A stretch of DNA of 64,000 bases, from the NCBI GenBank assembly GCA_964106645.2, contig OZ067038.1. One strand, 5' to 3'. The position numbers and the translations under genes are program-made. Below the pieces are notes generated by a model. It did no database searches, was not told the origin of the DNA, and worked only from the letters and a program-made list of their open reading frames with translations. Positions 11,101 to 49,400 of the stretch are shown here, piece after piece. This DNA comes from Podarcis pityusensis (taxonomy: Eukaryota). Within the stretch, counting starts at the first letter, position 1. Each line of letters opens with the position of its first letter.

Positions 11101-13419
11101 GATAACCGGCTGGCTTAGTGCCACAGAGCGGCAATCCTCACAGCTGCAGAGCTTTTGAGCAACCTGCCTCCTGGCTCTTTACTGAGCAAACTCTTGGTCG
11201 GCTGTTTTGCTGCCAACACGCTGGGTGGGTTTGTTGATTTTAAGAGTCCAGGTTTCATTTTCTCCTTGTATGCAGGTGGAAAGGTGGGTGGAGCAATGAT
11301 AGCAGGTGGGAGGAACTGGCTGTCCCGAGTGCAGGCCTGGAAGATTGTGATTGGGGGTGGAGAATAGAACAAGTCATTTAAGGAGGACATGGAATGAACA
11401 GCAACAAAAAAGCAGAGGGAGATACTTAACTGGCAAAGCCAGTCTGTTGGCCAGTCATGTGATTAACATGGCTACGATCAGGGAGTGTACAGCAAGGACA
11501 CACAAGGAGTCTCAGGATTTGAAGGTGGCTGCCTGAATCTCAAAGAGGGAAGTCCATAAAGGTAATTATTTCCCCTGTGCTTTTCCATTTTGTAGGATGC
11601 TGCTTGTGAATAAGCTAAAATGACTGTGAAATTGCTCTCTCTTCTGCCTGTGCCATCTGTGCTCTTGGCTTTCTGCCTTGCCACAAGGAGTGAGCAGGAA
11701 AGGACAGCAGCTTTACAAGGTGAGACGAAAAGAAAAAGTTGTCCTGGTGTTGGTCTGTGTCTTTTATGAATATATGTAGGCTTGTGGTGCTTAGCAATTA
11801 AGGCAGTCTGACCCACTGTTTTTTCTTCCCTGTGCCCTTCTTGCTTGACCTGATTAGGCCTCCTGCCTTTGCAGTCACTTGTGCTTCAACCACTAAGCTC
11901 TCTTCTGTGTTTGGATCTCTCTTTTTGGAAGAGACACACTTTATTTATGAGACAATATGAGTGTTTTGAGGGAAGATTTGAAACTTCTTACATGGCAGGC
12001 CTATTTCCATTATTGTTTCTGTTTGGCACAGTGGGCTTTCCTAGGCCTTGCTTCCCAATTTGAGATTATTTTTCCATTGTTGTTTTATGGTCAGTGAGAT
12101 TTGTGTGCGTACGTTTGTATTTAACACTTGCTATCTGATCATAGGGGTGTCCTATGTTTTCCATTTGTTCTTGAGACCTCATTGAATTCCATTTTCCCAT
12201 GACACACATTGCCAGGTTCCTGTAGGCTTCACATCAGCTCACTGATGCTTGATATGGCTGGCTTCTGTCCTGTGAGGGCTTTTCAGTAGTCAACATTTGT
12301 CTATCCATCATTCTCTTTGCCTTCTGCTTAACATTTGCTGTAGGGGTGCATGGAGCTTTAGGAGAGAATGAATAGTGCATACACTGTTAATCTGACCTAT
12401 ACAATCCAGTCTTACTCTGGCCTCTGCCCATGCTGGCCCTGCAGCCAGTGGCAAAGCATACAGGAACTTGGGAGAAAAAAATGGGCTATTCTTCTCTGGG
12501 AACAGAGGATGCTGCCTAGTCAGTTGCATTCTAAGGGGTGGCTTAGTACAGCAACATAGTCATCCTATTGGCTGATCAAATCCTAAGTTTATTTGCTGAC
12601 CAGCTATATGGTGTTTATTTGTTTTCTGTTTTTCATTTGCATTACTGTTGGCTGCCTTGGACATATGTAGAAGGAAGTGGAATACAGTTTTTTAAAAAGA
12701 AATTAATTAGTAGTGGCCAACTTGTAGGGATCTTCAAAATATGTGAGTGTGCTACTCTATATTGCATTACAGTACCTGTGCAAACCTGTGTGTGTTAGGC
12801 TACTAGTGGCTTTCTCTCTAGTCTTCTAATCTCAGGAGTAGGTGTCATTGCAGTGCTGAAGAGACAGGCAAGAATATACATTTGATTTTGCCTTAGTCGG
12901 GCCTATAAATCCTCAGCTTCTAGTCCAGAAGTGCCATAGACTCATTCTGCCTTTGCCACTGTGATGTTTGTGCCACAGCTGGATACTATGGGGTTAAATT
13001 TAGTATGTGGTGGGGCAATGAAACACTAGGTTAGCCATACATGGAACTGACACATTTATTCCCATTATTAGTGCTTTCAAATGACCATATAAATAAATAG
13101 TTGAACTGTCGTTCTAGGAAGTGAGCAGATTTATCTCTGGAGTGTCGCAGATATCTGCATACAAGATTTTTACTTCCTTATGATTTATTTTTGATGTGGC
13201 TCACAAAATGATCAGGCAGTGCACGATGAAGAAACTCTACTGTGCTCCTTCTAGATTTAACTTGCTATCCCTATGTATTGGTAAAATAGCTTTGTTAGTA
13301 CAGAGATGAAGTACTCTTTCATAACACATCCTACTACAAAGGTAAGGATGCTAACATTTCCATTTCCATCGAGTGACAATGGGGACACAACCTGCATCTC
13401 TTAAGTCGTATGCTTAAAT

Positions 13420-19758: not shown

Positions 19759-20904
19759 TATAGTTGCATATTTATGCCTACTGTTACACCAGCAGTGGTA
19801 GTTAAGAACCATTGGGTGCCTCCAGAATAGTCCATCAACAGGCAACCAGAGCCCTTGAAGTTGGGTTTGAATCTCTGGTTGCTTATAGCATACAAACAAC
19901 ACATAAAAAGGTCTCAAATACATAAGTTACTCTTAATTGAGAACTGCATGAGAAAATTATGTTCCATGTGCTACATCACTTGGCAAGTAGAGCGCAATGT
20001 GGAATAAATTCCCATTTAAATTTATCTGCTAACATGAGGGAGACTATTTTAGAACTGGTACATAGATGGTACTTAGGTCATTTAACTATCATATGTGATG
20101 GCCATGTGTGCAAAATGAATTTTACTTGGAAGTCACCCCACACCAAAATAGTATTGATCAGTCAGACATGATTTATGCTTTGTACTTCTGGACATTTCTG
20201 AAAATGATTATTATTCTTACAAAGACTTATCAACTTTTGTTTATAGCAGCTAAACTGGATATGTCTGAGCACTGGAAAAGATACAGAACCTCTATCTATT
20301 TCTCAATGGTATCAAATAAGGTGGAGGTTCACTGTCATGGACAAACAAGTGCATCCATTTCATGTACTTCATTGTTCCAGTTCCAGTTCATATCAAATAC
20401 TAACAAGTATACAGACATGCAACTTTTTGCTCAGCAAAATGTACTGTGTTGTACAGGTTTTTTTGAAGGTTGATTGCTTTTCCTTTGAACTTGTAGCTCT
20501 GAAGCACTTATTATAATTATAGTATCTTTTAAAAAAAAGTTTCCAGGTGTGCAAATGACCAGTGAATACCACCAATGCTTTTTTTTATACATTAGCAGTA
20601 TTTGGTTGGCTAGGTTTCCCCCCCTGTTCTTTCCTTTTTCTATAGTGCTTGCTTCAGTGCATTGCCTCTGGTGCATTGTGTGTGGTGTGTGTGTTATGAG
20701 GAGGGTTGTTGAATGTGATCATTGTGTTAATGCCCTTATTATCAATTTGTTCTCTGTTCATTATAAATAAGGAATCTATGGCATAGATAGAGTTATAGTT
20801 AGAATCACATAGTTAGCTGATCTTGTTATCAGGATGATAAATATTTATCTCTCTTCTCTATAGTAAATTCACTTTAAACAGTCTTTCAGGAGACATCACA
20901 TGGT

Positions 20905-20917
20905 ATGCATATTAAAA
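20905..20917 (+). CDS. SIGIRR: Candidate SIGIRR start exon (exon 20864-20917; coding MHIK + 1 nt)
   Basis: Pyrimidine-rich acceptor ctcttctctatag ending 20863 and consensus donor AAA|GTAAGT at 20918. ATG 20905 leaves phase 1, in frame with the exon at 21071. In-frame TAA upstream at 20875. Would give a 529-aa two-Ig protein. Confidence 0.5.
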
Positions 20918-21070
20918 GTAAGTTCAGCCAGGGGGGCAGTGTCTATGACCTGGTTGGGCATGAATGACTTTGTTGCTGTTGGAGTTGCGTATTCTGTGCT
21001 TGCTGTAGAAATGTAGGTTGGATTAGGCATCACAGAAGTAGTTGCAATTTAACTGCTTTGCTTTATTTAG

Positions 21071-21418
21071 AATTCTTTTCGCTGACGGTTTCATCTAATT
21101 TATCGTGTGTGGACCCAGATCACTTCTATGATCACACCATTTGGACCCAGCAAGAACAGGTTAATCATTTGTTCTGCCCTTTGGATAACCAGAGCCTCCA
21201 GCTTCTTCAGTCTACCTCAAACTTTAGCATCCAGTGGAGCAAAAACTGTCATCTGCTTAACTTCACCGCGTTAAGCCACCTGCACAGCACACTGCAGAAC
21301 ACAACAACATACCTCACCTTTGAGCACGCAAATGCCAGCGATGCAGGCAACTATACCTGCACGCTCTACTTGAACGATCAGAGAAACAGCTCCTTCACTG
21401 TCCGGCTGGTCATGGCAG
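21071..21418 (+). CDS. SIGIRR: SIGIRR extra Ig-like domain exon (IL-1R family D2 type)
   Basis: 348-nt open phase 1-1 exon, tttag|...G|GTGAGT. Encodes C...LFCP...IQWSKNC...DAGNYTC...FTVRLVMA with 8 N-glycosylation sequons. Confidence 0.85.
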
Positions 21419-24400
21419 GTGAGTGAAAGAAGTGGGAATTTGCAAACATGACTTTGGATCCCTAACCTAACACTGACGTCTCCTCTTGGGCCCATCCCAG
21501 GAGAAGCAGTACTGCTACTGTTTCAAGATGGGCCACTTGTCTGCCTAAGTCTGGATCCTATGTTGCTCATTAGACACATAGTAGCTGTGAAGTATCTAAC
21601 TATGTAGGGCATGATTTTGTCCGTTTTCTCCTAAACATAAGGTACTGATCATACTCAAATAAGTTATGGCATTAGATAAGCCCTGGGGATGTGAGCCAAT
21701 TTATCAAGTGCTATGATCCAAATTATGCATTGTCAACCAGAAGTTGGCGGGTTGATGTCTGTGACTGTATGTGTGGCTGTTGCTGAAGAGGGCTTCCCTT
21801 TACCTGGGAGAAAAAGGCAGACACGGAGCTCTTTCTGAGCCCTCTCTGCATTTTATGTTATATCTAAGATGACATATAAAGGTAAAGGGACCCCTGACTG
21901 TTTGGTCCAGTCACGGATGACTCTGAGGTTTCGGCGCTCATCTCGCTTTACTGGCTGATAGAACTGTGTAAACAGATAAACCTGGCGAAGGCTTCACTGT
22001 GGTGGAGACATAGTTTAGGAGAGAGAGAAAAGATTTAATGTTTCTAAAGCTGTGATAACAAGTGATAGTACCTAAAATGTGGTGAGAGGTACCTGAAGCT
22101 ACCAAGATAAGCTCACTCCGTCCCCCATTTGCTAGTTGCATTGTCAGAGTTGAAATGGGGAAAGACAGGTTTAAAAAAATATATATGTTGAGATTTTAAA
22201 AATTAGCAGACTTGTTGGCACAGATAAGTGTGTTTTTGTCTCTGCTTAATCTTTTATAGTGCACTTAAACTAGGATGGATCACCATTTTGGAGCACTTCA
22301 TTATGCTATTAGAAACATAAATTAGCTAAAGATGGTCAGAGGGAGATCATACATCATTTGAGCTGAAATCCTGCACACACATCCTGAGACCTGGAAGTCA
22401 GGCTTGCTAGGCACTGTAGGTCTTATTTCTGAGAAGATTTGTATAGGATTGTACTCTTCAATTTTTTTTATTAATTAAGATAAGGATGGTAGTTGCTGGT
22501 TTCTCAGGAAGTTCTCCTGAATTGGCTAAGGACTGGATATGGGCTCTAAAAAGAATATTTTTTGTATTGTTCTCCCTTTTAAATAAAGGTAAAGTTTGGA
22601 AATGAGTCCAATACACACAGAGGTACCTACAGAAGGGAGAGCCTTTACATTTTAAAAAATGATGACCATGATGGCCTAGTTCTCCTTTTCAGAATTTAAG
22701 GGAATGTAAGGGAAAGGAAAATTAGGGACAAGTACCTGTGACATATTCTAGTTTTTAATGCAATGTGACATTTGCACCTTAAACACCCTATTTTCCGCAA
22801 TAGGATTCAGAAAGTTCTTCATTAAAAAACGCACGCTCACATATGCTGAAAATGTGTCACATATGCTGAAAATATTTAGCATGGATGAATGAGTTGACAG
22901 TATGGAAGACAGAGGGGGAAGAACAGCACTGTGCTGGACTCTGAACAGGCAGTGAGAATAATTAAAGTACTGGCACTAGGACTTCAAAAGTTAATAATTA
23001 ATACCATATCTCATATTCAGCACTTCTGTGATGTGCATACCCCTTTATCCTGGGCATTTCTCTATTATGGGACATGACATGCTTTCCAGATAACCTGAAC
23101 ATTCTGTCTTTCCCACTATAGTCCTTACTGAATTTCTCATTGTTTTCTCAAGTCAAATCAGAACTGCAGAACCAGCCTTGAGAGAGAGGTTATACTCAGC
23201 AATTTGTCTAGTTAAGTCGGCGAACCCACTGTGCAAGGGAGATTGTGCTTAGGTGCAGGGTCACAGGGACAAGAGTAGCTTGACTTTCTTTGTTATGTTA
23301 GCCAGACCTAAATAGCCAATATAAGATTTGCAGTATTCAGTCTGGAAGTTCAGTGCTCTCATTGAAAAGCTCTCTTACGATGTACTGTTATTGTTTCCCC
23401 AACAGATATTTGCAGTGTCCTTCCTCGTTTCCTTTACCCCTCCAGCAATCTGACTTTGCAACGTGATTTGGGAAGCCAGTTTACACTGAACTGCACTGTG
23501 CAGCTGCCCTACACGAAAAGCTGTGATTTTGGCCTCCACTGGATGAAAGATGACCAGTTGCTAGACAACGAGACCTTTGCTGCTTCTACTCATTGGTAAG
23601 AAGGCTTTTATGTATAATGGAAAATAAAGCTAAATTGACTGTATAAACTAGAAACAAATTAAAATAGTGTCTCCCAGACTCTGAAGATAATGGTGGATCT
23701 TTAAGGGCTTATGTATACTATTAGCCTTATAGGTTTGTAGAATAGGGGCAGTAGTGTAATATATATACTTCAATGGGAGGAAATATCTTTGCTATAGTAG
23801 GGTGAGATTGAGTGAGAGTGGGAGATTGTGTTTCTGTTAAAAAGCAAATTGTACACTTAAGCCCTGGAGAAGAGCTTAAGAGAATGCTCTATGTATCAGT
23901 CTTCAATGGGGAGGCAGAGGGAGAGGGAGAGGGAGAGGGAGAGGAAGAAGACCCTTTCAGATGTTTGTGGCTTCAGAACAAATCTGGTTTCATGAACACC
24001 CCCTTTATTTTAGTGTTCCCACTGCAGGGGACTTGTGTTGTACGTTATCAGTGGGGTCATAGATATGTTCTACTAGGTTACTGTGAACTCATGTAATATT
24101 TTGTACATTACTCAATAATGGCATGGAGGCTGTAGCTGGGAGAAGAAAAATTGACATTTCACTAGTAAGAAAAAAATGCACTTTAAGCAATAGGACATTG
24201 CTACTATAGTTCCACAAAATAAGTACTTTTATGTAAGACAATGGGATCCCATACAACAACTAAGCAACCACAATTAATCCTTTGCTTTAAAAGAACAAGG
24301 AAAAAGATGATTTTGAAAGTCCCCAAATTTCTACTAGTTTTTTTTAAAATATAATTTTTATTAACAAACCAATCAAATCACATTAATTCCAAATTACACA

Positions 24401-26060
24401 GCCAAATTTTTAAATTTTTGTTGGGGCTACCCATGCTTTGAGCTCAGAAAGGGATCCAAACATCTCTCTTGCTGCTGCTTTAATGTTCACAGTTCTGTCC
24501 AAACAGTATTCACAGTTCTGTTCAATCTTCTCTTTATTATTTTCCTCATCTTCTTGTTGTTGTCATATATTCCTTTCTTTGTGACCTCTGATAGTCTCCA
24601 CAAGCGGGTTGAAAACAAACGTTGTTATATCCTGTGTGGATTTTCATTCCTCCAAGAGCCATATTCAAACAGACAGACGCCATTTCCGCACTTCCGTACA
24701 AAACATTCTTAAAGTCTGTCCATTAATCCTCGCAGGCCTGTCAGTCTCTTAGGGGGTTCTGCCAGGTCAAACTCACAGTCCGATATAATAACAAGCCATG
24801 GTCTCCTCCCCCTCGATCATAAATCCTGTAGCCAGGCCTGCCCTAACAAGTCTATTTTTATAACTGCATCACAAAGACCTTTCATTCCTTCCCAGACATT
24901 CCACAAACCATGTCTTTGATTAGTAATTTATTTCCACACAGTTCTTAATCATCCTGCTTGTAATCAGTAATTGCAACGATTCTTCTTGGGGGGGGGAGGT
25001 TATTAGGTACTCACATAAGATAAAAAAAGAAAAGTCCCCCCCCTTTCAGTCCCGTTTCGACATACCGACCCTTTGATGTATCTTCTTCTTGATATATTGT
25101 TAATCGCTCGTCGCTCCACTTCACAGAGGTCACTTCAATTAGCAGTCTTTACTCCCGATCTTCACTCGAAATATGTGCATTTGCTTCTCTCTAATTGTTT
25201 ATTATGAGCTCCTGCAACCAGGCAGTGTTCCCCATTCCCTTGGGGTAACAAGGGAGGCTGCATACTTCCATATCAGCTTCTTAATTACCTCGTGTGAGAC
25301 GGAGAGATGTTATTGTCGGCCATCTTCCAATGCGCCCCTAGCGGCCCCCCAAATGTCTACTAGTTTTTGTGGAAGAAAAGGTTTTCAAAGGCCAACGTGA
25401 TAAAATAGTGACAGTATTTCCAGATCATAGATACTCAAATGGACACTCTTGTTACCAACTCACAGTTCATTCCTTGTCCAAATTTAATGTTTGGTATAAT
25501 CCAAGATTGATAGGGTGGAGACCTCTGAGTTTCCTTCCGGTCCGGTTCTGACTGAAATTTCCTAGTGTTTGTTTTCAATCAGTGCTAACGTAAATCATCT
25601 TCTATTTGCACCCCAGGTTCAATGACAATAAATCAGAGATATTCATCTCCAGCACTTTGGATATGAATGTAACAACAGATGAAAATTATGGAGCATTTGC
25701 CTGCTGGGTTAGAAACAGTACAGCAGTTTTCACACTGCAAAAATCAGGTAGCATTTCTTTGTACTTCATACCATGTGCATTTGGTGTGGGCCGGTACTCT
25801 ATTTGAAGGTTGTTATCTTTATTAAGTTGTTCAAAAAAGATTCTGCTACTCACTAACTGTATTCCATAGTAGAATTCCCATGAGTATTTCTGAAATGAGA
25901 GTTGGAGATACTTTTTTTTTTTTTAAGAGTTGACAGACTACTCTGAAAACACACTTATGGCATTCAATCCAAATGTAAATTTCCCTTTCAGAAGTGACCT
26001 CTGAAAACCAATAGATAAGAATATGGCTGTGTACAGCATTGATTGGCTGATGCCTTTGAA

Positions 26061-26571: not shown

Positions 26572-29500
26572 AACTACATCCTTAGGTCCAATGTACAGGA
26601 TTCAGTATGGTCTATTGAGGATGTGGGTAGCATGGAATCTGGCCAGAGTTTGACCCACAGTGAGTTTATAGAGGTGTGACAGCTTCACTATACATTCAGT
26701 TTATAATTCAGTCCACATTTTTCACTTTGTAGTGCCACTGTTCAGATCACTCTTGGCATGTGTGCAAAGGCAAATGTGTTATGGGGGGGAAGAAACATAG
26801 TTTTGAACTAAGATGGCTTCAAAATTCTGAAGTATTGTATGACCCTCTGAGAATTTATGAACTGGGTATCTCAGCTTGGCTTTCCTTCTTTAAGGAAGAA
26901 GCAAGACTTAATTTTCTATATAGAAACTAACTGTTCTCATTTAAAAAATAGAGTAATTTACTTTAGCCCATGCATGGCCATCTGATAGACTGAAGTCTAG
27001 CTGGGGTGATAAGAGTATTTGCTTTTATGCAGTATCTAGATGCCTTCCTTTTCTTTTGAATAAGTTTCTCCTGTTTAACTTGGAATTCAAGAATCTCGGC
27101 TGAGCCTACCTGATCCTCTTCTTAGACTTTAGAAGATGTTTTTGCTCTAACTGGTAGTAGGGTTGCTAAAAAGGGCTTTGAACCAGACTTACCATGTCTC
27201 TAGAGGAGTTTAATATAAAGACAGCCTTTAGTGCCCTCAGTATTGCTCCATGCTGGCTTTAGGGCTCAGTTTAAAAGAGCAATTTTATGATGGCGTCATC
27301 AGTGAATCTGATGGCAGAAAATTGCCACATGATGGCACCAGCAGACAATAGAAACTTTTCTGAGGTTTTCAATCAGTCACAGCCTCAAATGGTTCTGCAC
27401 ACCAAAGCAAACGTGCTATTAGGCTGCCCCCAAGCAACTCAGCTGTTTTGGCATGCTTGAACACTTTCAAATTCCTCCATCTGGAAGTTTCCATAGGCTG
27501 ATGGAGCAATTCTGAGATTAGAGCCTCAGTGTATTTTAAAGCAACATTCAGCAAATGGCTCAGTTAACAGTGTATTCCAGAGTGTTTTACAAAAAGTCTA
27601 AATGAACATGCCCGCGCACTTGCAGGAAGAAATTGAATTGGTACTGGAGAATGTGAATAATTTAGTTCATGCACATCTTTACTCTGAAAACCTTTGATTT
27701 ACTTCTGCATGTGCATCTTGTGAAAGGAGATACTTGCAAAATCTGGAGGATGATCTAACAATGTGGTACCAGAATAAATCTGTCTTTTAGCTTCTGCTCA
27801 TCTCTTCCTCATCATGGTTGCACATTCTGATAGTCAGAACAGTCATCAAGATACTAAAAATTGTTCAAGAATGACATAACCCCTCATTTTCTTTATAATT
27901 TGGTATATATGGAGACCATAGAACCCAACTCTTCTCTTCCTCTTTTCTCTACCATGCTATCAATTACAAGGCTGTTTTCTAATTTAATGCTATTTAAAAT
28001 ATGTCTTTCTATTACAGCAGAGACTGCTGGGCACTTGGGCGCTGTGCTAGCTGCACTTGTCACTGTGGCACTGCTGTTACTAATGGCTGTGATGTATGTG
28101 AAGTGCCGTCTGAATGTGCTCCTCTGGTACAGAAACCGTCATGGAGAGGTGGAGATCAATGGTAAATATTGGGCTGGAGAGTTGGCCGTCACTTTTCCCC
28201 TTGTGAGATTCGAGTTTCACTGACAGTCCAACCCAAAGTGTGAACTTCTACAAGAATTATCCTCTCAGTGTTATAGCTAGTCAGCACAGGTTTTTTAAAA
28301 AAAAAAAAAAATTATAATAAATTTCTCCCCTTGGTACTTTTCCACAGATGGAAAGCTGTATGATGCCTATGTGTCTTATTCTAACTCAACGGATGATAGA
28401 AAGTTTGTCAACTTCATAGTGAAGCCACAGCTGGAGAATCGTCACGGCTACAAGATTTTCCTGGATGATAAAGACATCCTGCCCAATTCAGGTATAGAAC
28501 CTTGTCCAACACCTCATTTAATATGTACCTGGGCACTCAGACTTGCTGTTGAGTTCAGGCTGCAAATAACTTATCTGAAATGGATTAGTTGGCTAAATGA
28601 AGAGAAACCTTCAGTTTAATTTGCCCATTTGGCATCCTGTGTTTAATATGATAGCTTTATTAAGTGTTAAAATATCCAATTGAAATCGGTACACACACTA
28701 AGTCTGAATATCAGGTTAACTCTTGCATCCATTTTCAAACAAGAGGAGGAGAATGCAAAAAAACACTATTTCTATTAGACACTGAGACAGCAGGGTGAAA
28801 GTTGGTATGCAACTTCAGGGCAACATTCTGTATTTCAAGTACAGCTTAATCCATGTCCCTATTTCCAAGGTAGATTGGAAAGATGTAAAACATAGTGCAG
28901 TGCTATATCTGACTGAGATATTAGAATACAGGCAGGTGTGTACATTCAGGACATCATTGTGCATTTCATATATGATCCCAGCTTGACATCTGTATCCTTT
29001 TTCAGAGTGAAGAAAAGGGCCACAAACATTGCAATGCAGTATCTGAAATGAAGCCTGTTGAACGCTGCACTTTGCTACTTAATAGATGCAAAAGTATGGC
29101 TCTGAAAAATTACTTTGTCCTCTGGCACACTATTTTGTGCATCTGAAGCAACCTAAAATAGCTTTAATTCTAAACACCAATAATGGCAAAGCTGTGCAAA
29201 GTAGGAACTGAATATTTTATAGACAGGCTCTCTGTTGTACGAAGAAAAATGTATTCTCCTTAACCACCCAGTTGTTCACAGTTAGGTTCCATTTGCATAT
29301 TAAGTAGGATGTATTCACAGTCTGCCCAGTATATGCTCAGCACAACTGGTGGGCTTTCTACACCTGTTCAAAGTCTGTGGCATGATGCATTGCTTAACTT
29401 GCATGACCTTGCAGATATGCATTTCATTGTGCTGGCCCGCTGCCTCTCCCTGTGCCTCCACGTTTCCAGGCTGTTATTGCATATGTTTGACAATGTGTTG

Positions 29501-32500
29501 TTTCTTTATTTTGGGCACAACTTGTTTAATCTTCCTCCAAAGAGCATGAAGTGTAGTTCCTATCCAGGCAGTTTACAGGGCCACCACTGTTCTGGCTTCA
29601 GCAATATCACTGTAATCAGGTGCCTTCAGACCATTTGTTCTTATCTTCAACTGTTTTGTTTAATAAAACCTCTATAAAAAGTATGCAGCATCCCTTTGCA
29701 TGGGGATGCAAAACAAGCTGTGTACAAAATGCAGCTCCTCCATATTCTGTAATGCTGTCCACAGTGGACAGTTCTGGTTAAACAAGAATACACCACAAAA
29801 CAGCATTTGTGCTCTTTGTGGTGTGTCTAATAATAAAAAAATGCAATGTTTGAGTATACTCTTCATTTATTTATTTTTTAATGTCTTGAGTGTTCCACCA
29901 GAGGCACTCACATCCAGAACCAATGGTGCTGTCTGAAGGACAGGGAAGTTCTAAACAGGCTGGTTAGTTTTTATTCCATTGCCCGGGGCTTCTCCTTTCT
30001 GTAGAGCAGAGCGGATATGCATTTGGATGCTAGGGTACTTCTTTCTTGTACAGGTGAAGGATGAATGCTGAAACAACAATGGATTGGTTCTGGACCTTCT
30101 CAGAAGAGATTTAGTTTTTCTTCTCTCTTTCAGAACCTTCTGCAGATCTGATTATGAATGTTAGCCGGTGCCGCCGCCTCATTGTGGTTCTCTCTAATGC
30201 ATATCTGGAACAGGAATGGTGCAACAATAATTTCAGGTAATTAGAGTCAGCGATAGAGACAAGTTCTCTGATCCTCCTTTCATTTTTGGAGGATCAGGAA
30301 TGACTCAAGTGTGCACTCCCTCCTATTGCCCACCTTGTTTAATAGAAAGTTGACCAAGTTGACCAAACAGGCAAATAGTATGTGCAATTCTGATTTGGAG
30401 GGATCACTAAAATCACAGTTTGCTTATTTGGTTGTCCTGGTAAACTATGGCTTGTCAAACCAGTCAAGTGTTCCAATAAGTTGTACTCATAAGAGGAAGA
30501 GGGAAGGTAGAAGGGAGTAGGAAGGCAGGAGGGAGTATGTTCCTGGCTCTCCTATCTATGGTTAGAAGGGCCTCTGAATTTATCCAATTTCTGTATACAC
30601 CTCCAATCACAACACCCAGAATCTCTCTCATATATCTGGATATGAAGCACGGCAGTTTAGTGTTAATGCCTCTGAAACCAGTTCCTGAAGTTTTCATTGA
30701 ACTGAAACTAGTGGTGCTTAGAATTAAAATTGTGGGTGACTAGATTGGGTTCAAAGCTTTGTCAATAGTTTGGTTGTGGATTTGCTTAGGACTCTAACCA
30801 ATTGTCTGGTTTTGCAGGGAAGGTCTTTGGAGGCTGCTGGAACTATCCCGGAGGCCAATCTTCATTGTCTTTGAGAGCCAGTACCGAGAAATAGCACATC
30901 CAGCCATAAACTTGCTGAAGCAGCAGAAGAGCACAGTGACCCTTCTGATGTGGCGCGCTGGGTCCATGGTAAGTTGTGGGCTGCAAGGCCATAACTTCAT
31001 CACTGTGGTTATGTTTCTCAGTGGCAAGGCAGTACTTGAAGCTATTCAAGAAGCATAGAAGTGTGGAGTAGCTTCTCTTCCAAGAAGGGTTGAGATCCAG
31101 TCCTCCATTACTTGACCTTGCTGTGATGTATACCAGAGTAATAACTGTTACCTGCTTTTCTTGGCACTAAAGAGTAGCACCTTCATGAAAGTAGGCTGAA
31201 TATATTTTTGTCTGTCCGTTATTTTGATATCTCCTGTTATTTACTTTTTATTTTAGCTATTTACCTGTTGACTAGGAAATCATCAGCTCCAGAGATTTGC
31301 CAAATGATACCTTTTTAGATGAACATGGCTTGACTGCTCCATGACTCATGCGTGGAGGCCATGAGCAGTGTTGTAAGCATTGCAGAAAACATAGATAAGT
31401 TATATTTTAACTCCAACATTAAAGAAGCAAACAGAGCCACAGGGAGGCACCAGAACCTGAGAAATAAGAATTGGAAACATATACTTGCTTCACCCAGAGT
31501 ACTCTCAGTGCAAAGAGAAATGAAAAGAGAGGAGGAAGCTACAGACTGGGGAAGGAAAAAAGCACAAACCCTTCCCTAAAATGAGCATTTGCAGGGGAGC
31601 ATTCTAGCAGGATAGAGACTTCTGGTTTACAGTTATTGCTGTTTCTTTATCTGTGCTAAATGAACAATAGCATGCTTGTGACTCACAATACTCCTTGCAG
31701 TTGCACATCAGGATATTTAGTTATTTTATTATGCTTTTCACCCACCCTTCACCTCACGGTCCCAGGGCAGGTTACAACAATTAGAAAAACTACTGACATG
31801 ACACATGTGTGTGTATTTTTAAAGAACTGGACCCATCGTTTTTTGTAAGCTGGTATAATGCAAAACTTGTAGCTCATATAAATATTTAAATACATAAGTA
31901 GGATGCACACACAGGTAAACAAATAACTGCAAGCATGCTTGCAGTAGACCTTAGGTTTCCAGAACTTAGGGAGTGCAAGGAATGGAGGGGAGGGGACAAC
32001 AGCACACAGTGCAAAGACACCCCATCAAGCACCTCCCACTCTTGGGGGACAGGAAGCACTGCAGTAGAGTTCATTTGAAGGTGGTCCTGTGGACAGATGT
32101 GCACAAAAATCCACATGGAAAAATCAGAGCTGTGCAACTCACTTGTGCAATTAACACTCTGCTGTGCACACAACCTATGCCTCAAGACATAAGAAAGGGG
32201 CTTTTTGATTTTACTTACAATGTAAAGAATCCTAAGCAGCTTTGTTAAACAGGCCTTTTAGACACAGCAGTCAAGGAACTACCTACTCCCCTCCCCAGCT
32301 AATAAGAAGTTACGACAGCCAAAATATTTCAAAGCAGCTTTAACAGTGCCTGGAAAATGCCATTAGGTGCAAGGATACTGCTTCCTTCTGGCAGTGAGTG
32401 GATCAAAGCCACCATATGTCCGCTATTTTTTTGTTTACTCCTATCTCTAAGACAAAATGGGAACAGCACATTAACATTTTTAATAAGACTGTTGCTGTAC

Positions 32501-35500: not shown

Positions 35501-37303
35501 AAATTCTTGTAACCTCTATAGGTCACTTTCTCCTCTAGGGCTATGGCTTACTGCAGGCTTCCTCAAACTCAGCCCTCCAGATGTTTTTGGCCTACAACTC
35601 CCATGATCCCTAGCTAGCAGTGGTCAGGGATCATGGGAATTGTAGTCTCAAAACACCTGGAGGGCCAAGTTTGAGGAAACTTGGCTTACTGCATGCAGTT
35701 GTAGCTTGCAGCTATGGTTTACTGTGATGTACAGACTGGGCCACTAAGGTGAGATGAAGTTAGGAAATAGCAAGCTTGGGAAAGCTATCTGTGCGAGGCA
35801 TTGAAGCATTGCAGTCTGTTTCTGAGTTTTTGCTGGATACCAGCCACATGTTCTCTTGCCTTTTATCCATGAGGACAAAGCCAAAAGCCTTACTTTAAAA
35901 AAAAGAAGGGGAAAAAAAGAATTCACTCAATTTAAAATTGCACTGAAATCCTAGGTTAATGGAAAGGCGAAATCTGTTGCTTTATCTGGTCACGAAAGCC
36001 TTCCATCAGAAGTAATGCCACTTAATACCTCTTAGATTTTGCAGTGTGTTTCATCTCAAAGATGAAACAAAGCTGAATGGGAAAACTGTTGGGGGAGCTG
36101 TAGATCCCTCTGTTGTAGTGAACATTTATCTCCCTCTGTTCAATCCTTTGGGAGCCAGACAGGGTGCCTGTGCTTCATAGACGAGGAGCTCCTGTGAGAA
36201 CGCTGCCCTCAAGGCAGGGCTGCTGGGACTTGCCTACAGATATATCGCACAAGGGTTTGTGTGTAACTGATGAGCATGTGACAAGATGCTGCCTCTTTGC
36301 TGCTTCTAGGCGCCTTCATCTGATTTTTGGAAGGAACTGTGCCTCGCCCTGCCACGAAAAGTGTCCTATCAAGGCCTTAGGGGAGACCCCCAGACCAGTT
36401 TCCAGGAAGACAAGGACCCTATGCTGATCCTCAACAGCAATTACTTGGATTTCCGGGGGGATTCGCACCCTGAAGGAGACTCTGGTAACAGCACTGTTTA
36501 ATCTTCACTCTGTCACCATAGCATGCCAACAGGAGAACACACAGTTGCTCTTGATCCTGCTCTGTGGTTTTTTGTTTTTTTGAGTGTTAGTCCACAGTTA
36601 GCCAGAAAGATTCTCAAGTGAGGCTCACAATTAAGTTTGAAAGAAAAAACCCCATTAAAAAATCACTTGATAGAAGAACACTGCACTTGCTAAAATTAGC
36701 AAAAGTATAGCCCAGCAGCTTTATTAATCAGTCAGCCAGGTGCCTTTCTACACACTGCCATGAGCTAACTGTGTGCTTCCTGCCTGTATTATTACAGCTA
36801 TTTTAGTATGGTATGCCAAAACCCTATGTACACTTACTTTAACGTAAGTTCCATTGAACTCAATCCTTTAGAGTGGATATGTGTAGGATCAGGCCTCACT
36901 TTTGATTACAAAAGCTAAGGCTAGTCAGATGGTAACCGCCCCCGCCCCCCCGAATTAAAGATGCTTTGGAATATGTGATCAAATTGTGCTATGTATTCTC
37001 ATCTTAGTTTCACCTCTAGGAAATAGGTTTCTTCTTTATTTCAGAATTATCAAAATCTGTTCAGCCAAAGGTGACAGTGGAGACCAATGGAAGTGAAGCC
37101 TCTGCACCCACTTTCAGATTCCTTAAAATTTATTTTCTCCACTTTAAGCCTGTGTAGTGTAGTCAGATCACAAGCAGTAGTATTTATTTAAGGCCTTTAT
37201 ATACCATCTGACTTGGCAGAATGTGTCTACTTTGGTTGATCACCAGGCTTGGTCACCATTGTATGCTGTGTCTGTGGCTTCCAAATGGCATAACAGGTCT
37301 TCC

Positions 37304-38413: not shown

Positions 38414-39620
38414 CTGCTTGAGAGAAAGTGATGCACATTAAATGTATTTCATGAGGCTTACAAAGGTGTTACCGGTTTCTCTTCCCAGCTCCCCTCCTGA
38501 GGTCTTTGAAATGCTGCCTGTTAGTGCTAAGGGGAAGAGCAGCTTCTCTCAGACCCTGGGCATTGGCAAAAGGCAGGACTGAAGCCTCCTCCTCGATTCC
38601 CTAGGTGTTGAAATATTCAGGCCCCTTACTCTTGTCTGACATGTCAAGGCATGCTCTAAAATAAAACATTTAAATTAAGTTTAAAACTGCCAACTGACTC
38701 CCAAGCTGCATGAGATACAGGAGGTCTATAATTAGATCTCCTGACATTTCTGCTTTTAGTTAAAAGTAGCCAGAGGCTCCAGCTTTGATTAGAGCAGTGA
38801 CCCTGAGCCTCAGACCTGAGGAAAAAATTTTTTGAACTCTTTTCACTGTGCCATTACCCCAATCTGTACTGTCTCCTAGTTATAGATCTCCTGCATCTCA
38901 CGCAACTTGATACTTAAATTGGTTTAATAGTTCTTCCTTCTCTCCGGCTAGCCTTAGCAACTAGTTCTTTGAGGAAGGATAGCAATCTCACTGAAGTACT
39001 ATTCGCAGAAATGTTGGTGGGAAGCAATGATACTTAAACTGGTGTTTAAACGAGCTTGAACTGTATATATGTCCTGCTTGTGAATACAGTGGTACCTCGG
39101 GTTAAGTACTTAATTCGTTCCGGAGGTCCGTTCTTAACTTGAAACTGTTCTTAACCTGAAGCACCACTTTAGCTAATGGGGCCTCCTGCTGCTGCCGCGC
39201 CACCGGAGCACGATTTCTGTTCTCATCCTGAAGCAATGTTCTTAACCCGAGGTAATATTTCTGGGTTAGCGGAGTCTGTAACCTGAAGCGTCTGTAACCC
39301 GAGGTACCACTGTACTTACAGAAAGTATAGTGGCACTGGTCATTTTAAAGCACTGCAACTTGTCTCATTCTGCCTTGCCATCCCTTCCTCTCTGCTAACT
39401 GCTACCTTCTCCTTCCCATCCTACAGGTGGCAGGGGGTCCATTTTCAAAGGCGCACCGCCTCCTCCCATGAGTGGCCCTGATGGTCCTCCACTTGGTGCT
39501 TTGGAAGAAATACAGCTTGGGGAAAACCAAAGGAGTGAGATTGACATCTCTGATTTGGGATCTCGGAACTATGGAGCAAGGACAGATTTCTACTGCCTGG
39601 TGACAGAGGATGATATCTAA
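21071..39620 (+). CDS. SIGIRR: SIGIRR / IL-1R8 (TIR8), multi-exon gene; join(21071-21418, 23406-23595, 25617-25747, 28021-28161, 28348-28491, 30134-30236, 30818-30968, 36310-36484, 39427-39620); probable additional start exon 20864-20917
   Basis: Nine GT-AG exons with consistent phases. From ATG 21412 they give 411 aa: Ig domain, TM ...[27 protein letters not shown]...[14 protein letters not shown]-tail [17 protein letters not shown]. This closely matches recalled human SIGIRR (410 aa). Adjacent to PKP3 as in human. Confidence 0.97.
21878..21958 (-). mobile_element. Sauria SINE 3' fragment
   Basis: aaaggtaaagggacccctgac...gcgctcatctcgcttta matches the other copies. Confidence 0.75.
23406..23595 (+). 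CDS. SIGIRR: SIGIRR exon, membrane-proximal Ig domain N-half
   Basis: aacag|...TG|GTAAG; [13 protein letters not shown]...[11 protein letters not shown]...HWMKD; homologous to human GVCDRAPDFLSPS...LNCT...WLKD. Confidence 0.95.
24338..25346 (-). mobile_element. ~1-kb non-LTR retroposed element with L1-like 5' end
   Basis: 17-bp TSD ccccaaat(t/g)tctactag at 24321-24337 and 25347-25363; minus-strand AATAAA plus A-tail at the left end; 5' end GGGGCGCATTGGAAGATGGCCGAC. Confidence 0.8.
25617..25747 (+). CDS. SIGIRR: SIGIRR exon, Ig domain C-half
   Basis: cccag|...G|GTAGC; [43 protein letters not shown]. Confidence 0.95.
26064..26113. repeat. (CT)n(CA)n compound microsatellite
   Basis: Directly visible. 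Confidence 0.95.
26530..26567. repeat. (GT)n microsatellite
   Basis: Directly visible. Confidence 0.95.
28021..28161 (+). CDS. SIGIRR: SIGIRR transmembrane exon (alternative NAGNAG start at 28018)
   Basis: [46 protein letters not shown]; donor G|GTAAAT. Confidence 0.96.
28348..28491 (+). CDS. SIGIRR: SIGIRR TIR exon (box 1/box 2)
   Basis: [48 protein letters not shown]; cacag|...G|GTATAG. Confidence 0.97.
30134..30236 (+). CDS. SIGIRR: SIGIRR TIR exon
   Basis: [35 protein letters not shown]; ttcag|...AG|GTAAT. Confidence 0.97.
30818..30968 (+). CDS. SIGIRR: SIGIRR TIR exon
   Basis: [50 protein letters not shown]; tgcag|...ATG|GTAAGT. Confidence 0.97.
33218..34057. mobile_element. Tc1/mariner-type non-autonomous element, family B (long form)
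   Basis: TA|CAGTGGTGC...GCACCACTG|TA; repeated GCAAGACGAA subterminal motifs; internal tandem duplication. Confidence 0.9.
35554..35683. mobile_element. 130-bp palindromic hAT MITE
   Basis: Perfect 8-bp TSD gcttactg; the element is almost entirely an inverted repeat. Confidence 0.9.
36310..36484 (+). CDS. SIGIRR: SIGIRR TIR box 3 / tail exon
   Basis: [41 protein letters not shown]...PEGDS; tctag|...G|GTAAC. Confidence 0.97.
37305..37381. repeat. (CTTT)n(CCTT)n microsatellite
   Basis: Directly visible. Confidence 0.95.
38380..38411. repeat. (CA)n microsatellite
   Basis: Directly visible. Confidence 0.95.
39087..39312. mobile_element. Tc1/mariner MITE family A
   Basis: TA|CAGTGGTACCTCGGG...CCCGAGGTACCACTG|TA; inverted relative to the 17058 copy. 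Confidence 0.9.
39427..39620 (+). CDS. SIGIRR: SIGIRR last coding exon
   Basis: GGRGSIFKG...[28 protein letters not shown], stop TAA at 39618-39620. Confidence 0.97.
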
Positions 39621-46496: not shown

Positions 46497-49400
46497 CTGT
46501 AAAACACAGAAGAAGAAAAATATCACAAGGGCACATCATTCGACCCACCCAGTGCCCTATTGATATAAGACCCAATATGGCACAGATTCTCAAAAGAACT
46601 GCAAATCTAGAATTCATATCTGTGATACTGCAGAAGAGAATGACCTGCAGCAGGGGGTGCCCCTTCCTCCCTCATAAGAGAAGTTTGTACCTGATGGCTG
46701 AAATGGAAGCCCCCCACCATGGGAAATAAGGGTGATGTGCTATGTTCTATTAGTGTGCTAAAATGTTCAAACATTTAAAATAAGGGGGAGCCCTAAAAAC
46801 AAGTGGCACTTACCAAGCCCTTGGAGGACACACATTCCCGACACCTTAGATAAGTGCCATGAATCCTGGACTAAAACTATAGGTTATTGATCTATTTGGG
46901 GCAATATCCTCAGCTAAGGCCAAAATGGCAGCTGAACAAACAGCACATCTCTGTCACTTTCCTATTCAGTACTATAGGGCTAAACCCAAAGCACAGCAGG
47001 TACCCGCTAAGCATCCCTTGTTAAAGTTAGATGCAAAAGGGTATAGGGTGGGCTCCCATACTGTTAATAGTGGTTCAAAATAGGGGCGTAGAGCAGGTAC
47101 AGTGGTGCCTCGCAAGACGAAAAGAATCCGTTCCGCGAGTCTCTTCGTCTTGCGGGTTTTTTCGTCTTGCGAAGCAAGCCCATTAGCGGTTTAGCGGATT
47201 AGTGCTACAGTATTAGCGGCTTAGCGGGCTTAGCGGATCAGCTGATAAGCGGCTTAGCGATCAGCTGTTAAGCGGCTTAGCGATCAGCTGATAAGCGGCT
47301 TAGCCATCAGCTGATAAGCGGTTTAGCGGCTTGGGAAAAAGGGGGGGGGGGAGGAAAAAACCCCCGCAGGAAATCGCAAGACATTTTCGTCTTGCGAAGC
47401 AAGCACATAGGAAATTCATTTTGCGAAGCACCTCCAAAACGGAAAACCCTTTCGTCTAGCGGGTTTTCCGTCTTGCGAGGCATTCGTCTTGCGGGGCACC
47501 ACTGTATATGTTTTCTTATGCCTCCATGACAAACTATACTTACTGAAATTCATTCTTCCAGAAAACTACTAATAATACAGGCGTGCTGGCCTTTGTAGCT
47601 GATCATATCTAGAAGATACCTCTTCTCCCTCTTCTAGAATCAGAAATCTATTCATGCATATTGCAGCACAGGCACCCTATGAAGTCATTTCTCTTGTGAT
47701 GTGGATGTCCAGGAGTGCAAGCTTTCACACTGCAGGACTTGAAGGAGCAACCATACTTCCCCCTCTAGACTGGGCAGGAAGTCAGTTCTTCACTCACTGA
47801 GTAGTGGAGAGAGAGCAATTGGGAGGAAGGAACATACCGTCTTATAGTCCCGATGAAGCTTGCTGTACTGCCACATGTTGGTCAGGAGGCTGGAAGCAGC
47901 TCTCGACGACTTCTCACTGTCTGAGCTGGAGAATAAAGACAGACACAACACATTGCAAGTGCACTTTAAGACACAGACTCTCTTCCTTCATAAACTATTG
48001 GTGGATTTTATACTAGGTTACATCATGTCTATTAGTGAACCACTGAGAATTAAGGTAGCAAGCCTTAGACACATAGTGAGGAGTTCCACATAACGCTAAG
48101 TGGGGTATGGACACAAGGAACAAGGTCTGCTTGTGCAGTGGGATTTAGCTACTCCCCCCCCCTTGTGCCCCCCTGAACCTGTTCTGGGGGCTCCCCCCAT
48201 CTTCCAGAACAAATTTAAGGGCATAGAGGAAGAGAGGGGGGACAGCTCAGCTGAATTCCTCCCACGTACTTATGACTAAGCCCTACTAAATTCAGTGATA
48301 CATCCAATAGGCTTGGGCTACATTTCTGAGTTGGTCACAACTGGACCTAATGGTCAGGGGTCCCTTTATGTTTACCTTTACACTTCTGGAAGAAAATGGG
48401 TCTGTCTTAACAAATGGGCATGGTCTGTAGGAACAGACTCACAGCTTTGCAAATCCACAAACACTCCCCTTAATAGAAATTTAGACAGGAGGACGTACTG
48501 TTTAGCAGTAGGTGGACTAATTTCACACCTTTGCATGCAATTGGTATAAAGCAGCCAGATGGCCTAAAATGTGACTGAATATGGAGTTCTTGGAATTCAA
48601 CTGGTGGTTTCAGCATATGGAATTGGAGGAGGAATCCCCAGGTCTTCCCCACCTGTCCCTTTTCTTCTTGATGTAGAATAGCTTCCGCAGGCCATCGAAG
48701 TAGACAATGTCACGTGCAGCAACAGGGCTTTCCACAACCAAATTGTTCAGCACAGCAATAATGTTGACAACCACGTCTGTTGGAGGCCACTTCTCTCCAG
48801 AGCTGCCTGGGAGCTTCTCGATCAAATGACTCACCACCTTGGTTGCTGCAAATCAAAAACAAAACTGATCAGTGATGCAGGTGACTACAGGTGAAGCCCC
48901 AAGGAATGGGACACGCCCCAGAAACACTGTGTGGATGGAGTAGGCAAGGTTATTCTGCATGGAGGACAGCGCCTCCCAGCTTTCTTCCAGGTCCTGGGAT
49001 GGTGACCTTTGCTATATTTTCCAATTGGAATGACACTCACACATCTCATCCTTATTGCGCGCATTCCGGGAGAGATTCCGAATAAGTCCCGTCAGTGAAC
49101 GGAGTTGGTGATGGTCAGCTGTGCGGACTCTGTCCAGCACTGGGTTCAGGATCCTCTCTTGTTCCAAAGCCACTCTGCTGAGGACACCAGCCCACTACAA
49201 TGAAACAGGAGCCAGCAAGAGGATGAGTTGTCAGCCAAGTCAATAAAGCATCTGAGCTCAAGTTGCAGATGTGGGGAGAGAGATTCCCACATCCCCTCTG
49301 CTTATTGCTGTAACATTGTTTATCAAAAACCCTTGTGTTTAAGATGACTCCATGGCAGGTTTGCACAGCAATTTAGTGCTACAGCACAGAAAGCATCAGG

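What the first reader, a model, noticed from the sequence alone, without database searches (positions are those of the whole stretch)
21071..21418. Lizard SIGIRR carries an intact second Ig domain: a double-Ig (DIGIRR-like) IL-1R8 in an amniote
Seen: a 348-nt stop-free exon with good splice sites, phase 1-1 and in frame with the SIGIRR Ig exon at 23406. It encodes C-x(20)-LFCP...IQWSKNC...DAGNYTC and 8 N-x-S/T sequons. Known: mammalian SIGIRR has one Ig domain. IL-1R1 domain D2 has the same four-cysteine pattern (C...LVCP...QWYKDC...GNYTC). A two-Ig relative, DIGIRR, is described from teleost fish. Inference: this syntenic SIGIRR ortholog keeps a D2-D3 ectodomain, so the single-Ig state may be a later loss. 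The extra domain could change ligand or co-receptor binding (IL-1RAcP, IL-18R, ST2).
Basis: partly seen in the sequence, partly recalled or inferred. Interest (0 to 1): 0.9.

Follow-up and report, generated by a model that had tools for sequence, protein, structure and literature searches.

The report
Lizard SIGIRR keeps second Ig domain
The exon is a real, spliced, conserved coding exon that gives this wall-lizard SIGIRR (IL-1R8) a second, IL-1R-D2-like Ig domain; public gene models already contain it, but the papers searchable here do not describe it, and it shows that the single-Ig form of mammals, birds and turtles is a repeated secondary loss.

Summary
Observation confirmed. Window 21071-21418 (+) is a stop-free, phase 1-1 exon with AG/GT sites. 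It encodes 115 aa with four cysteines and 8 sequons, and scores above the Pfam Ig_2 cut-off.

Transcript contigs from four runs in four studies join 21418 to 23406 and 23595 to 25617. One contig also carries the ATG/signal-peptide exon (11620-11719).

The ten exons read as a 559-aa protein. It differs by one residue from the deposited Podarcis lilfordi "single Ig IL-1-related receptor isoform X1".

The domain is 53% identical to Ig1 of sturgeon DIGIRR. All four Cys are invariant from lizard to teleost. dN/dS is 0.21, like the canonical SIGIRR Ig domain at 0.24. Profile and fold comparisons place Ig1-Ig2 colinear with D2-D3 of IL-1R family receptors.

Two-Ig models of 546-561 aa are already annotated in lacertids, other squamates, crocodilians and salamanders. 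Birds and turtles start at the Met that ends this exon. Turtles keep a dead copy of the exon, with ATG changed to GTG plus stops or a frameshift.

The gene model itself is not new; only the biology is undescribed in the searched literature. Function as a negative regulator is inferred, not tested.

The scan holds no earlier finding of this on other DNA.

The parts
11404..11561 (+). 5' non-coding part of the first exon, with a proximal donor at 11561/11562. The start coordinate is approximate.
   Evidence: The X1 contig carries 158 nt before the Ig1 exon, ending ...CTCAAAGAGGGAAGTCTATAA. This matches window 11532-11561 with 1 mismatch. An in-frame TGA lies at 11534-36.
11620..11719 (+). Coding exon 1: ATG plus a hydrophobic signal-peptide-like leader (MTVKLLSLLPVPSVLLAFCLA...), with a phase-1 GT donor.
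   Evidence: tblastn of Lacerta agilis P0124 residues 1-33 is 100% identical. Sequence. The X10 contig's loose end equals 11690-11719 joined to 21071.
21071..21418 (+). The finding: the Ig1 exon (D2-like Ig domain, 4 Cys, 8 sequons), phase 1-1. Its last Met (21409-21411) is the start codon of single-Ig forms in other taxa.
23406..23595 (+). First half of the canonical SIGIRR Ig domain (Ig2, D3-like; contains the DLGSQ...LNCT motif).
   Evidence: (joint, GT..AG).
25617..25747 (+). Second half of Ig2.
28018..28161 (+). Transmembrane exon.
28348..28491 (+). TIR exon.
30134..30236 (+). TIR exon with the SIGIRR-type Cys ([11 protein letters not shown]).
30818..30968 (+). TIR exon.
36310..36484 (+). 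End of TIR ([10 protein letters not shown]) and start of the C-terminal tail.
39427..39620 (+). Last coding exon: C-terminal tail ending ...[12 protein letters not shown] plus the stop codon.

Best explanation
Window 21071-21418 is the second coding exon of the SIGIRR (IL-1R8) orthologue of a Podarcis wall lizard.

Shown:
- It is spliced between a signal-peptide exon (ATG at 11620) and the canonical SIGIRR Ig exons.
- The product is a 559-aa type I membrane protein: leader, Ig1, Ig2, TM, TIR, long tail.
- Ig1 is orthologous to the first Ig domain of fish DIGIRR.
- Together with Ig2 it is colinear with domains D2-D3 of IL-1 receptors.
- It is under purifying selection as strong as Ig2.
- It is ancestral to bony vertebrates. 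It is retained in squamates, crocodilians, salamanders and sturgeons, and absent from the annotated proteins of birds and turtles. Turtles keep a dead copy of the exon.

Inferred, not shown here:
- Mammals lost it as well. This rests on the literature's single-Ig description, not on a test made here.
- In every loss, translation falls back on the conserved Met at the 3' end of this exon.
- The protein acts like mammalian SIGIRR and fish DIGIRR, as a TIR-bearing negative regulator of IL-1R/TLR signalling.
- The extra D2-like domain enlarges the ectodomain surface available for contacts with IL-1 family ligands or receptor chains.
For: Exon anatomy.

Pfam: Ig_2, I-set and ig are above cut-off.

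Splicing: one long contig in each of 4 runs (4 studies, 3 closely related organisms) joins 21418->23406 and 23595->25617 across GT..AG. X10 continues upstream into exon 1.

Gene model: 10 AG/GT exons give 559 aa, with 1 mismatch to P. lilfordi CAI5763121.1. Exons 1-4 are identical.

Orthology:
- 53% identity over the full length to the Huso/Acipenser DIGIRR cluster, which holds UAB59905.1 'DIGIRR' (E 6e-28).
- Two-Ig RefSeq models exist in lacertids, Elgaria, Anolis, Sceloporus, Pogona, Python, Varanus, geckos, Rhineura, 4 crocodilians and 2 salamanders.

Conservation:
- C12, C35, C59, C96, W55 and D90-G92-Y94 are invariant in 18 sequences.
- NG86 dN/dS is 0.21 for Ig1, 0.24 for Ig2 and 0.09 for TM+TIR.
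- Lacertid variants in the exon are 6 synonymous to 1 non-synonymous.

D2-D3 homology:
- The ectodomain profile matches IL1RAPL1, IL-1R2, IL-1RAcP, IL-1R1, IL-36R and ST2 as one colinear stretch over their residues of about 135-320 (E 5e-15 to 1e-7).
- For the Ig1 model, 10 of the top 11 VIA-align rows are D2 of IL-1R family chains, Z 11.0-11.7.
- For the two-domain model, the top 8 rows are IL-1R family D2-D3.

Loss in other amniotes:
- Bird and turtle proteins start M[AE]DLCSV, which is the Met closing this exon.
- The Chelonia relic has 2 stops and the emydid mRNA has a 4-nt deletion.
- Both turtles have GTG where lizards, snake and gharial have the leader ATG.
Against: - There is no protein-level evidence. 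The signal peptide is judged by eye only.
- One run (X1) shows a transcript using a proximal donor at 11561. It skips the ATG exon and has an in-frame stop upstream, so it could only yield a single-Ig product from the Met at 21409. 412-aa isoforms are also annotated. The proportion of the two forms is unknown, because contigs give no quantities.
- The runs are labelled 'RNA?' by guess, although the spliced joints show an RNA origin.
- The structural preference for D2 over generic I-set domains is only about 1 Z unit, which the tool calls tied.
- Function is extrapolated from fish and mammals (PMC9448908, PMC3482685).
Confidence: 0.9

Rival explanations
1. The exon is transcribed but acts mainly as 5' UTR in lizards, as in turtles. 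The principal protein would then be the leaderless 412-aa single-Ig form, started at the Met at 21409.
For: The X1 contig joins 11561 directly to 21071 and skips the ATG exon. 412-aa 'MADICSV...' isoforms are annotated in P. lilfordi, Python, Pseudonaja and geckos. Turtle mRNA carries the dead exon upstream of its ORF.
Against: The ORF is intact from ATG 11620 through the exon. dN/dS is 0.21 and the cysteines are invariant. Lacertid changes are 6:1 synonymous. The X10 contig and the agamid full-length cDNA L006 contain leader, Ig1 and Ig2 in one ORF. In the leaderless transcript an out-of-frame ATG at 21129 precedes the Met (read from the sequence).
Confidence: 0.06
2. The extra domain is a squamate-specific gain, by exon capture from another IL-1R gene, and not an ancestral retention.
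For: Mammalian, bird and turtle SIGIRR are single-Ig. The domain resembles IL-1R D2.
Against: Orthologous Ig1 sits at the same position and in the same phase in crocodilians, salamanders, sturgeons, paddlefish and a teleost, at 31-58% identity. Turtles hold decayed copies at the syntenic place. It is far closer to DIGIRR Ig1 (53%) than to any IL-1R D2 (about 20%).
Confidence: 0.02
3. It is a chance open frame or a mis-annotated intronic pseudo-exon.
For: None beyond the exon's short length.
Confidence: 0.01

Closest known systems
DIGIRR (double Ig IL-1R related molecule) of teleosts and sturgeon (Gu et al. 2011, cited in PMC9020223; PMC9448908; Acipenser sinensis UAB59905.1)
   Same: Leader, two Ig domains, TM, TIR and tail. 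Ig1 is orthologous (53% identity, all 4 Cys). Per PMC9020223, DIGIRR sits at the same chromosomal place as SIGIRR and is an alternative to it.
   Different: The lizard TIR has the SIGIRR-type Cys (SRCRRL) where sturgeon DIGIRR has Ser (SHSRRL). The host is an amniote. The Golgi/cytoplasmic localisation reported for fish DIGIRR is untested.
Mammalian and avian SIGIRR / IL-1R8 / TIR8
   Same: Orthologous gene. Ig2, TM, TIR (Cys and Ala-Leu substitutions) and tail are conserved. A PKP3-like neighbour lies downstream. The Met used as the start in birds and turtles is the Met closing the lizard Ig1 exon.
   Different: Those proteins have one Ig domain and no leader exon. The lizard form has a leader and a second, D2-like Ig domain (559 aa against about 410-418 aa).
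IL-1 receptor family ectodomains (IL-1R1, IL-1R2, IL-1RAcP, IL1RAPL1, ST2, IL-36R, IL-18Rbeta), domains D2-D3
   Same: Colinear profile match of Ig1-Ig2 to D2-D3. Ig1 has the C...CP...W-x-K-x-C...NYTC cysteine pattern, which from my own knowledge of IL-1R1 is the D2 pattern. These chains are the best structural matches.
   Different: No D1 domain. Sequence identity is only about 16-26%. Ligand binding is unknown.
Existing public models: P. lilfordi CAI5763121.1, P. muralis XP_028592102.1, Lacerta agilis XP_033012288.1, Anolis, Python, Alligator and others, all named 'single Ig IL-1-related receptor'
   Same: They contain exactly this exon with the same boundaries. The window model differs from the P. 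lilfordi protein by 1 residue.
   Different: None in sequence. The name hides the second Ig domain, and I found no paper that describes it.

Membership tests
Immunoglobulin superfamily domain (Pfam Ig_2 / I-set) | Profile score above the curated cut-off | tested here: met
   Ig_2 29.7 bits (cut-off 27), I-set 24.1 (23.7), ig 22.2 (21.8).
Immunoglobulin superfamily domain (Pfam Ig_2 / I-set) | Beta-sandwich fold with a B-F disulfide and a core Trp | tested here: met
   AF2 model pLDDT 81 with 7 strands. Foldseek and VIA-align hits are all Ig domains. C35, C96 and W55 are invariant.
SIGIRR / IL-1R8 orthologue | TIR domain with Cys and Ala-Leu at the two positions that are Ser and Arg-Tyr in IL-1R1 (as listed in PMC9448908) | tested here: met
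   Window exon 7 reads [11 protein letters not shown] and exon 9 reads [10 protein letters not shown].
SIGIRR / IL-1R8 orthologue | Long C-terminal tail after the TIR domain, and high identity to named SIGIRR proteins | tested here: met
   Tail exons end ...[15 protein letters not shown]. The model has 1 mismatch in 559 aa to P. lilfordi SIGIRR, and lacertid SIGIRR (P0124) is 71% identical to turtle SIGIRR.
SIGIRR / IL-1R8 orthologue | Conserved synteny (PKP3 and ANO9 neighbours) | tested here: inconclusive
   Exons like the Arm-repeat gene downstream of Chelonia SIGIRR lie at window 47824-48844. The upstream anoctamin gene was not found within the window.
SIGIRR / IL-1R8 orthologue | A single extracellular Ig domain (the name-giving feature) | tested here: not met
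   There are two Ig domains. Orthology is kept, but the architecture differs.
DIGIRR | Two extracellular Ig domains, a leader, TM and TIR | tested here: met
DIGIRR | Ig1 homologous to the Ig1 of described DIGIRR | tested here: met
   53% identity to the sturgeon DIGIRR cluster, E 6e-28.
DIGIRR | Ser retained at the IL-1R1 Ser447-equivalent position of the TIR domain (PMC9448908) | tested here: not met
   Lizard, newt and crocodilian have Cys; sturgeon has Ser.
DIGIRR | Golgi or cytoplasmic localisation, and inhibition of IL-1beta- or LPS-driven NF-kB | not testable with these tools
   Needs cell biology.
IL-1R family D2-D3 module | Colinear homology of the two Ig domains to D2 and D3 | tested here: met
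   Single-stretch profile hits to seven IL-1R family members over chain residues of about 135-320. Ig1 alone hits D2 ranges. The two-domain model gives the same result.
IL-1R family D2-D3 module | Cytokine or co-receptor binding | not testable with these tools
   No binding data.

The most novel reading that the evidence does not exclude
One gene makes two receptors in squamates. Choice between two donors in the first exon (11561 or 11719) would give either a leader-bearing two-Ig receptor or a leaderless transcript that can only yield a mammal-like single-Ig SIGIRR from the Met at 21409. Mammals, birds and turtles would then each have fixed the short form independently. The D2-like domain would give the long form a ligand or co-receptor contact that mammalian IL-1R8 lacks.
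Probability: 0.2. Interest if true: 0.6.

Novelty: new member of a known kind. Interest (0 to 1): 0.4.

Why it matters
SIGIRR/IL-1R8 is treated in reviews as defined by a single Ig domain. It has even been argued to lack evidence of IL-1R ancestry (PMC5861070).

A conserved D2-like domain in lizards, snakes, crocodilians and salamanders is orthologous to fish DIGIRR Ig1. This has three consequences:
- DIGIRR and SIGIRR are one orthologous gene.
- The ancestral tetrapod receptor had a D2-D3 ectodomain.
- The single-Ig state arose independently in birds and in turtles, and by inference in mammals, through the same route: loss of the leader and Ig1, with the start at a pre-existing Met.

The turtle pseudo-exon catches this process in the act.

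Practically, reptile and amphibian SIGIRR cannot be assumed to behave like the mammalian protein at the cell surface. It offers a natural system for asking what the ectodomain of IL-1R8 does.

The gene models already exist, so this is a matter of interpretation rather than of discovering a new gene.

Tried and rejected
- Foldseek against PDB with the Ig1 model gave only generic I-set hits, with IL-1RAcP and IL1RAPL1 at ranks 20-24. It was not discriminating, so I used VIA-align and profile searches instead.
- The single-sequence and Ig1-profile PDB searches are dominated by multi-Ig titin, through summed domains.
- The third homologue search (newt Ig1 region) returned only 2 proteins. It says nothing about frogs, caecilians, lungfish, coelacanth or mammals.
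- Chicken mRNA contigs show no recognisable Ig1 relic upstream of the ATG. I do not claim that none exists in bird genomes.
- A broad paper search combining SIGIRR with taxon words was swamped by unrelated hits. The targeted ones found no description of a two-Ig tetrapod SIGIRR.
Exons were searched by reference, and the stored proteins P0246 and P0124 served as full-length proxies. The only joining was an in-script frame check that printed coordinates.
- No phylogeny with teleost or mammalian SIGIRR was built, because those sequences were not retrieved.

Full report
**1. The observation**

Window 21071-21418 on the + strand reads without a stop only in the frame that starts at 21073. The exon is bounded by AG at 21069-70 and GTGAGT at 21419. 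It is 348 nt long and phase 1-1.

The 115-aa peptide has four cysteines: C12, C35 in LFCP, C59 in WSKNC and C96 in NYTC.

Pfam places it in Ig_2 (29.7 bits, cut-off 27). I-set and ig also score above their cut-offs.

**2. The gene around it**

tblastn of Lacerta agilis SIGIRR (P0124) on the window finds ten coding pieces between 11620 and 39620. Resolving the splice sites gives ten AG/GT exons:

| Exon | Coordinates |
|---|---|
| 1 | 11620-11719 |
| 2 | 21071-21418 |
| 3 | 23406-23595 |
| 4 | 25617-25747 |
| 5 | 28018-28161 |
| 6 | 28348-28491 |
| 7 | 30134-30236 |
| 8 | 30818-30968 |
| 9 | 36310-36484 |
| 10 | 39427-39620 |

- Their reading is 559 aa. It differs at one residue from the deposited Podarcis lilfordi 'single Ig IL-1-related receptor isoform X1' (CAI5763121.1).
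- Exons 1-4 are identical to that protein, so the window comes from a Podarcis wall lizard or a very close relative.
- Exon 1 holds the ATG, a hydrophobic leader and a phase-1 donor.
- Joining was done only inside a script, to check frames, and only coordinates were printed. Exons were searched by reference, and the stored proteins P0246 and P0124 served as full-length proxies.
- Exons resembling the Arm-repeat gene downstream of turtle SIGIRR lie at 47.8-48.8 kb.

**3. Is it spliced?**

Eighteen small runs hold 8-14% of the words of 20900-25900. The three exons make up 13.4% of that stretch.

I laid four of these runs, from four studies and three closely related organisms. In each, a single contig of 2.3-4.1 kb covers 21069/21088-21418, jumps to 23406-23595 and then to 25617-25747, across GT..AG.

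- In X10 the contig continues upstream with the last 30 nt of exon 1, so leader, Ig1 and Ig2 are on one molecule.
- In X1 the upstream part instead ends with window 11532-11561. This is a proximal donor that lies before the ATG.
- That transcript has an in-frame TGA at 11534 and no in-frame ATG before the Met at 21409. It could encode only a 412-aa single-Ig protein, such as is also annotated in P. lilfordi, Python and geckos.
- Contigs cannot give the proportions of the two forms.
- An agamid cDNA contig (L006) carries the whole two-Ig ORF of 552 aa.

**4. What the domain is**

A full HMMER scan of 1.84 billion representatives finds the sturgeon protein P0005 at E 6e-28. It is 53% identical over the whole exon. 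Its 90% cluster contains 'DIGIRR [Acipenser sinensis]'.

An alignment of 18 Ig1 domains runs from lacertids to a teleost. It has C12, C35, C59, C96, W55 and the D-x-G-x-Y-x-C motif invariant.

Sequence profiles:
- A profile of Ig1 hits IL-1RAcP, ST2, IL-1R2, IL-1R1, IL-36R and IL1RAPL1 within their second domains.
- A profile of the whole ectodomain matches these receptors as one colinear stretch, over chain residues of about 135-320, that is D2-D3. E-values run from 5e-15 to 1e-7, and only multi-Ig titin scores higher.

Predicted structures:
- The AlphaFold model of Ig1 has pLDDT 81.
- Ten of its top eleven VIA-align rows are D2 of IL-1R family chains (Z 11.0-11.7, 92-101 residues aligned).
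- The two-domain model (pLDDT 79) gives IL-1R family D2-D3 as its top eight rows (Z 12.2-12.9).
- The margin over generic tandem Ig domains is about one Z unit. Structure alone would therefore not decide the question, but it agrees with the sequence profiles and the cysteine pattern.

**5. Selection**

Codon alignments anchored on the window used Python, Anolis, Sphaerodactylus, the agamid cDNA and Gavialis. Mean Nei-Gojobori dN/dS by region:

| Region | Mean dN/dS |
|---|---|
| Ig1 | 0.21 (15 pairs, range 0.10-0.35) |
| Ig2 | 0.24 |
| TM + TIR | 0.09 |
| Tail | 0.14 |
| Leader | about 1 |

Among the lacertid transcripts, the exon shows 6 synonymous changes and 1 non-synonymous change.

**6. 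Distribution**

- Two-Ig models of 528-561 aa, all named 'single Ig IL-1-related receptor', are annotated in many taxa:
  - lacertids: Lacerta, Zootoca and three Podarcis species;
  - other squamates: Elgaria, Hemicordylus, Varanus, Anolis, Sceloporus, Phrynosoma, Pogona, Phrynocephalus, Python, Rhineura and geckos;
  - four crocodilians;
  - two salamanders.
- Birds (about 410-415 aa) and turtles (417-434 aa) start at M[AE]DLCSV. That is the Met which closes the Ig1 exon in lizards (...RLVMADICSV).
- Turtles keep the exon as a relic:
  - An emydid mRNA, 97% identical to Terrapene SIGIRR, still splices leader-like and Ig1-like sequence upstream of its 417-aa ORF. It has a 4-nt deletion.
  - The Chelonia genomic copy has two in-frame stops and internal deletions.
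  - Both turtles read GTG where lizards, snake and gharial read the leader ATG.
- Crocodilians retain the domain, so the bird and turtle losses are separate events.
- Mammalian SIGIRR is described as single-Ig in the literature (PMC9020223, PMC3482685). I did not examine mammalian sequence.
- Frogs, caecilians, lungfish, coelacanth and tuatara remain open (one search was uninformative).

**7. Comparison with what is known**

- DIGIRR is described from teleosts and sturgeon. It is seen as an alternative to SIGIRR at the same locus and as a 'transitional' form (PMC9020223, PMC9448908, PMC3482685).
- The lizard protein has the DIGIRR architecture and an orthologous Ig1. Its TIR, however, carries the SIGIRR-type Cys (SRCRRL) and Ala-Leu, whereas sturgeon DIGIRR has Ser.
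- It is best called a SIGIRR orthologue that retains the ancestral two-Ig ectodomain.
- Searches of the held literature found no paper that notes a two-Ig SIGIRR in any tetrapod.
- A 2025 survey describes SIGIRR-like proteins as mostly single-Ig (PMC12108812). A 2018 study states that SIGIRR lacks evidence of IL-1R ancestry (PMC5861070). The D2-D3 colinearity found here bears on that statement.

**8. Mechanism**

Shown: a leader-bearing, two-Ig, TM and TIR protein is encoded, spliced and conserved.

Inferred: it dampens IL-1R/TLR signalling, like its fish and mammalian orthologues. The D2-like domain would extend the ectodomain surface for contacts with IL-1 family ligands or receptor chains. 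Nothing here tests binding, localisation or signalling.

**9. Verdict**

Novelty is limited, because the exact exon is already in public gene models. The undescribed part is the evolutionary reading: an ancestral two-Ig state with repeated loss through the same Met. Interest is moderate.

Noticed in passing
window 11404-11719: The first exon has two donors. The proximal one (11561) lies before the ATG, and the distal one (11719) lies after the leader. Transcript contigs of different runs use one or the other. The proximal form has an in-frame TGA at 11534 and a short upstream ORF from the ATG at 11468.
   Followed up: partly
L001 266-690, L002, L013 9689-10003 and about 1290-1400: Turtles (an emydid mRNA and the Chelonia mydas genome) keep a transcribed but dead Ig1 exon. 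The emydid has a 4-nt deletion; Chelonia has two stops plus deletions. Both share ATG>GTG at the leader start codon.
   Followed up: yes
window 21409-21411: The Met closing the Ig1 exon is the annotated start codon of bird and turtle SIGIRR and of the squamate short isoforms. This fits the scan's separate note about the mammalian start codon. Mammals were not tested here.
   Followed up: partly
window 21735-22068 (intron 2): In all four runs, 22-27 contigs per run lie here with summed depths in the thousands, and many loose ends fall at 21877, 21912 and 21955. This looks like an interspersed repeat that is present in many transcripts.
   Followed up: no
window 24240-25408 (intron 3): Many short, diverged contig pieces with irregular joints lie here. 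These are probably further dispersed repeats, not SIGIRR exons.
   Followed up: no
window 21071-21090: The lacertid exon starts 18 nt (6 codons, EFFSLT) further upstream than the exon of Anolis, Python and geckos (ALQ|AS...SC). Lacerta agilis isoform X3 uses the downstream start (ALQ|VSSNLSC).
   Followed up: partly
window 47824-47950 and 48626-48844: Exons similar to the Arm-repeat (plakophilin-like) gene that lies downstream of SIGIRR in Chelonia. This is consistent with conserved synteny.
   Followed up: partly
L011 and L012 (chicken mRNA contigs), about 1.2 kb upstream of the ATG: A long 5' region precedes MAEFCSV. tblastn finds no recognisable Ig1 relic in it.
   Followed up: partly
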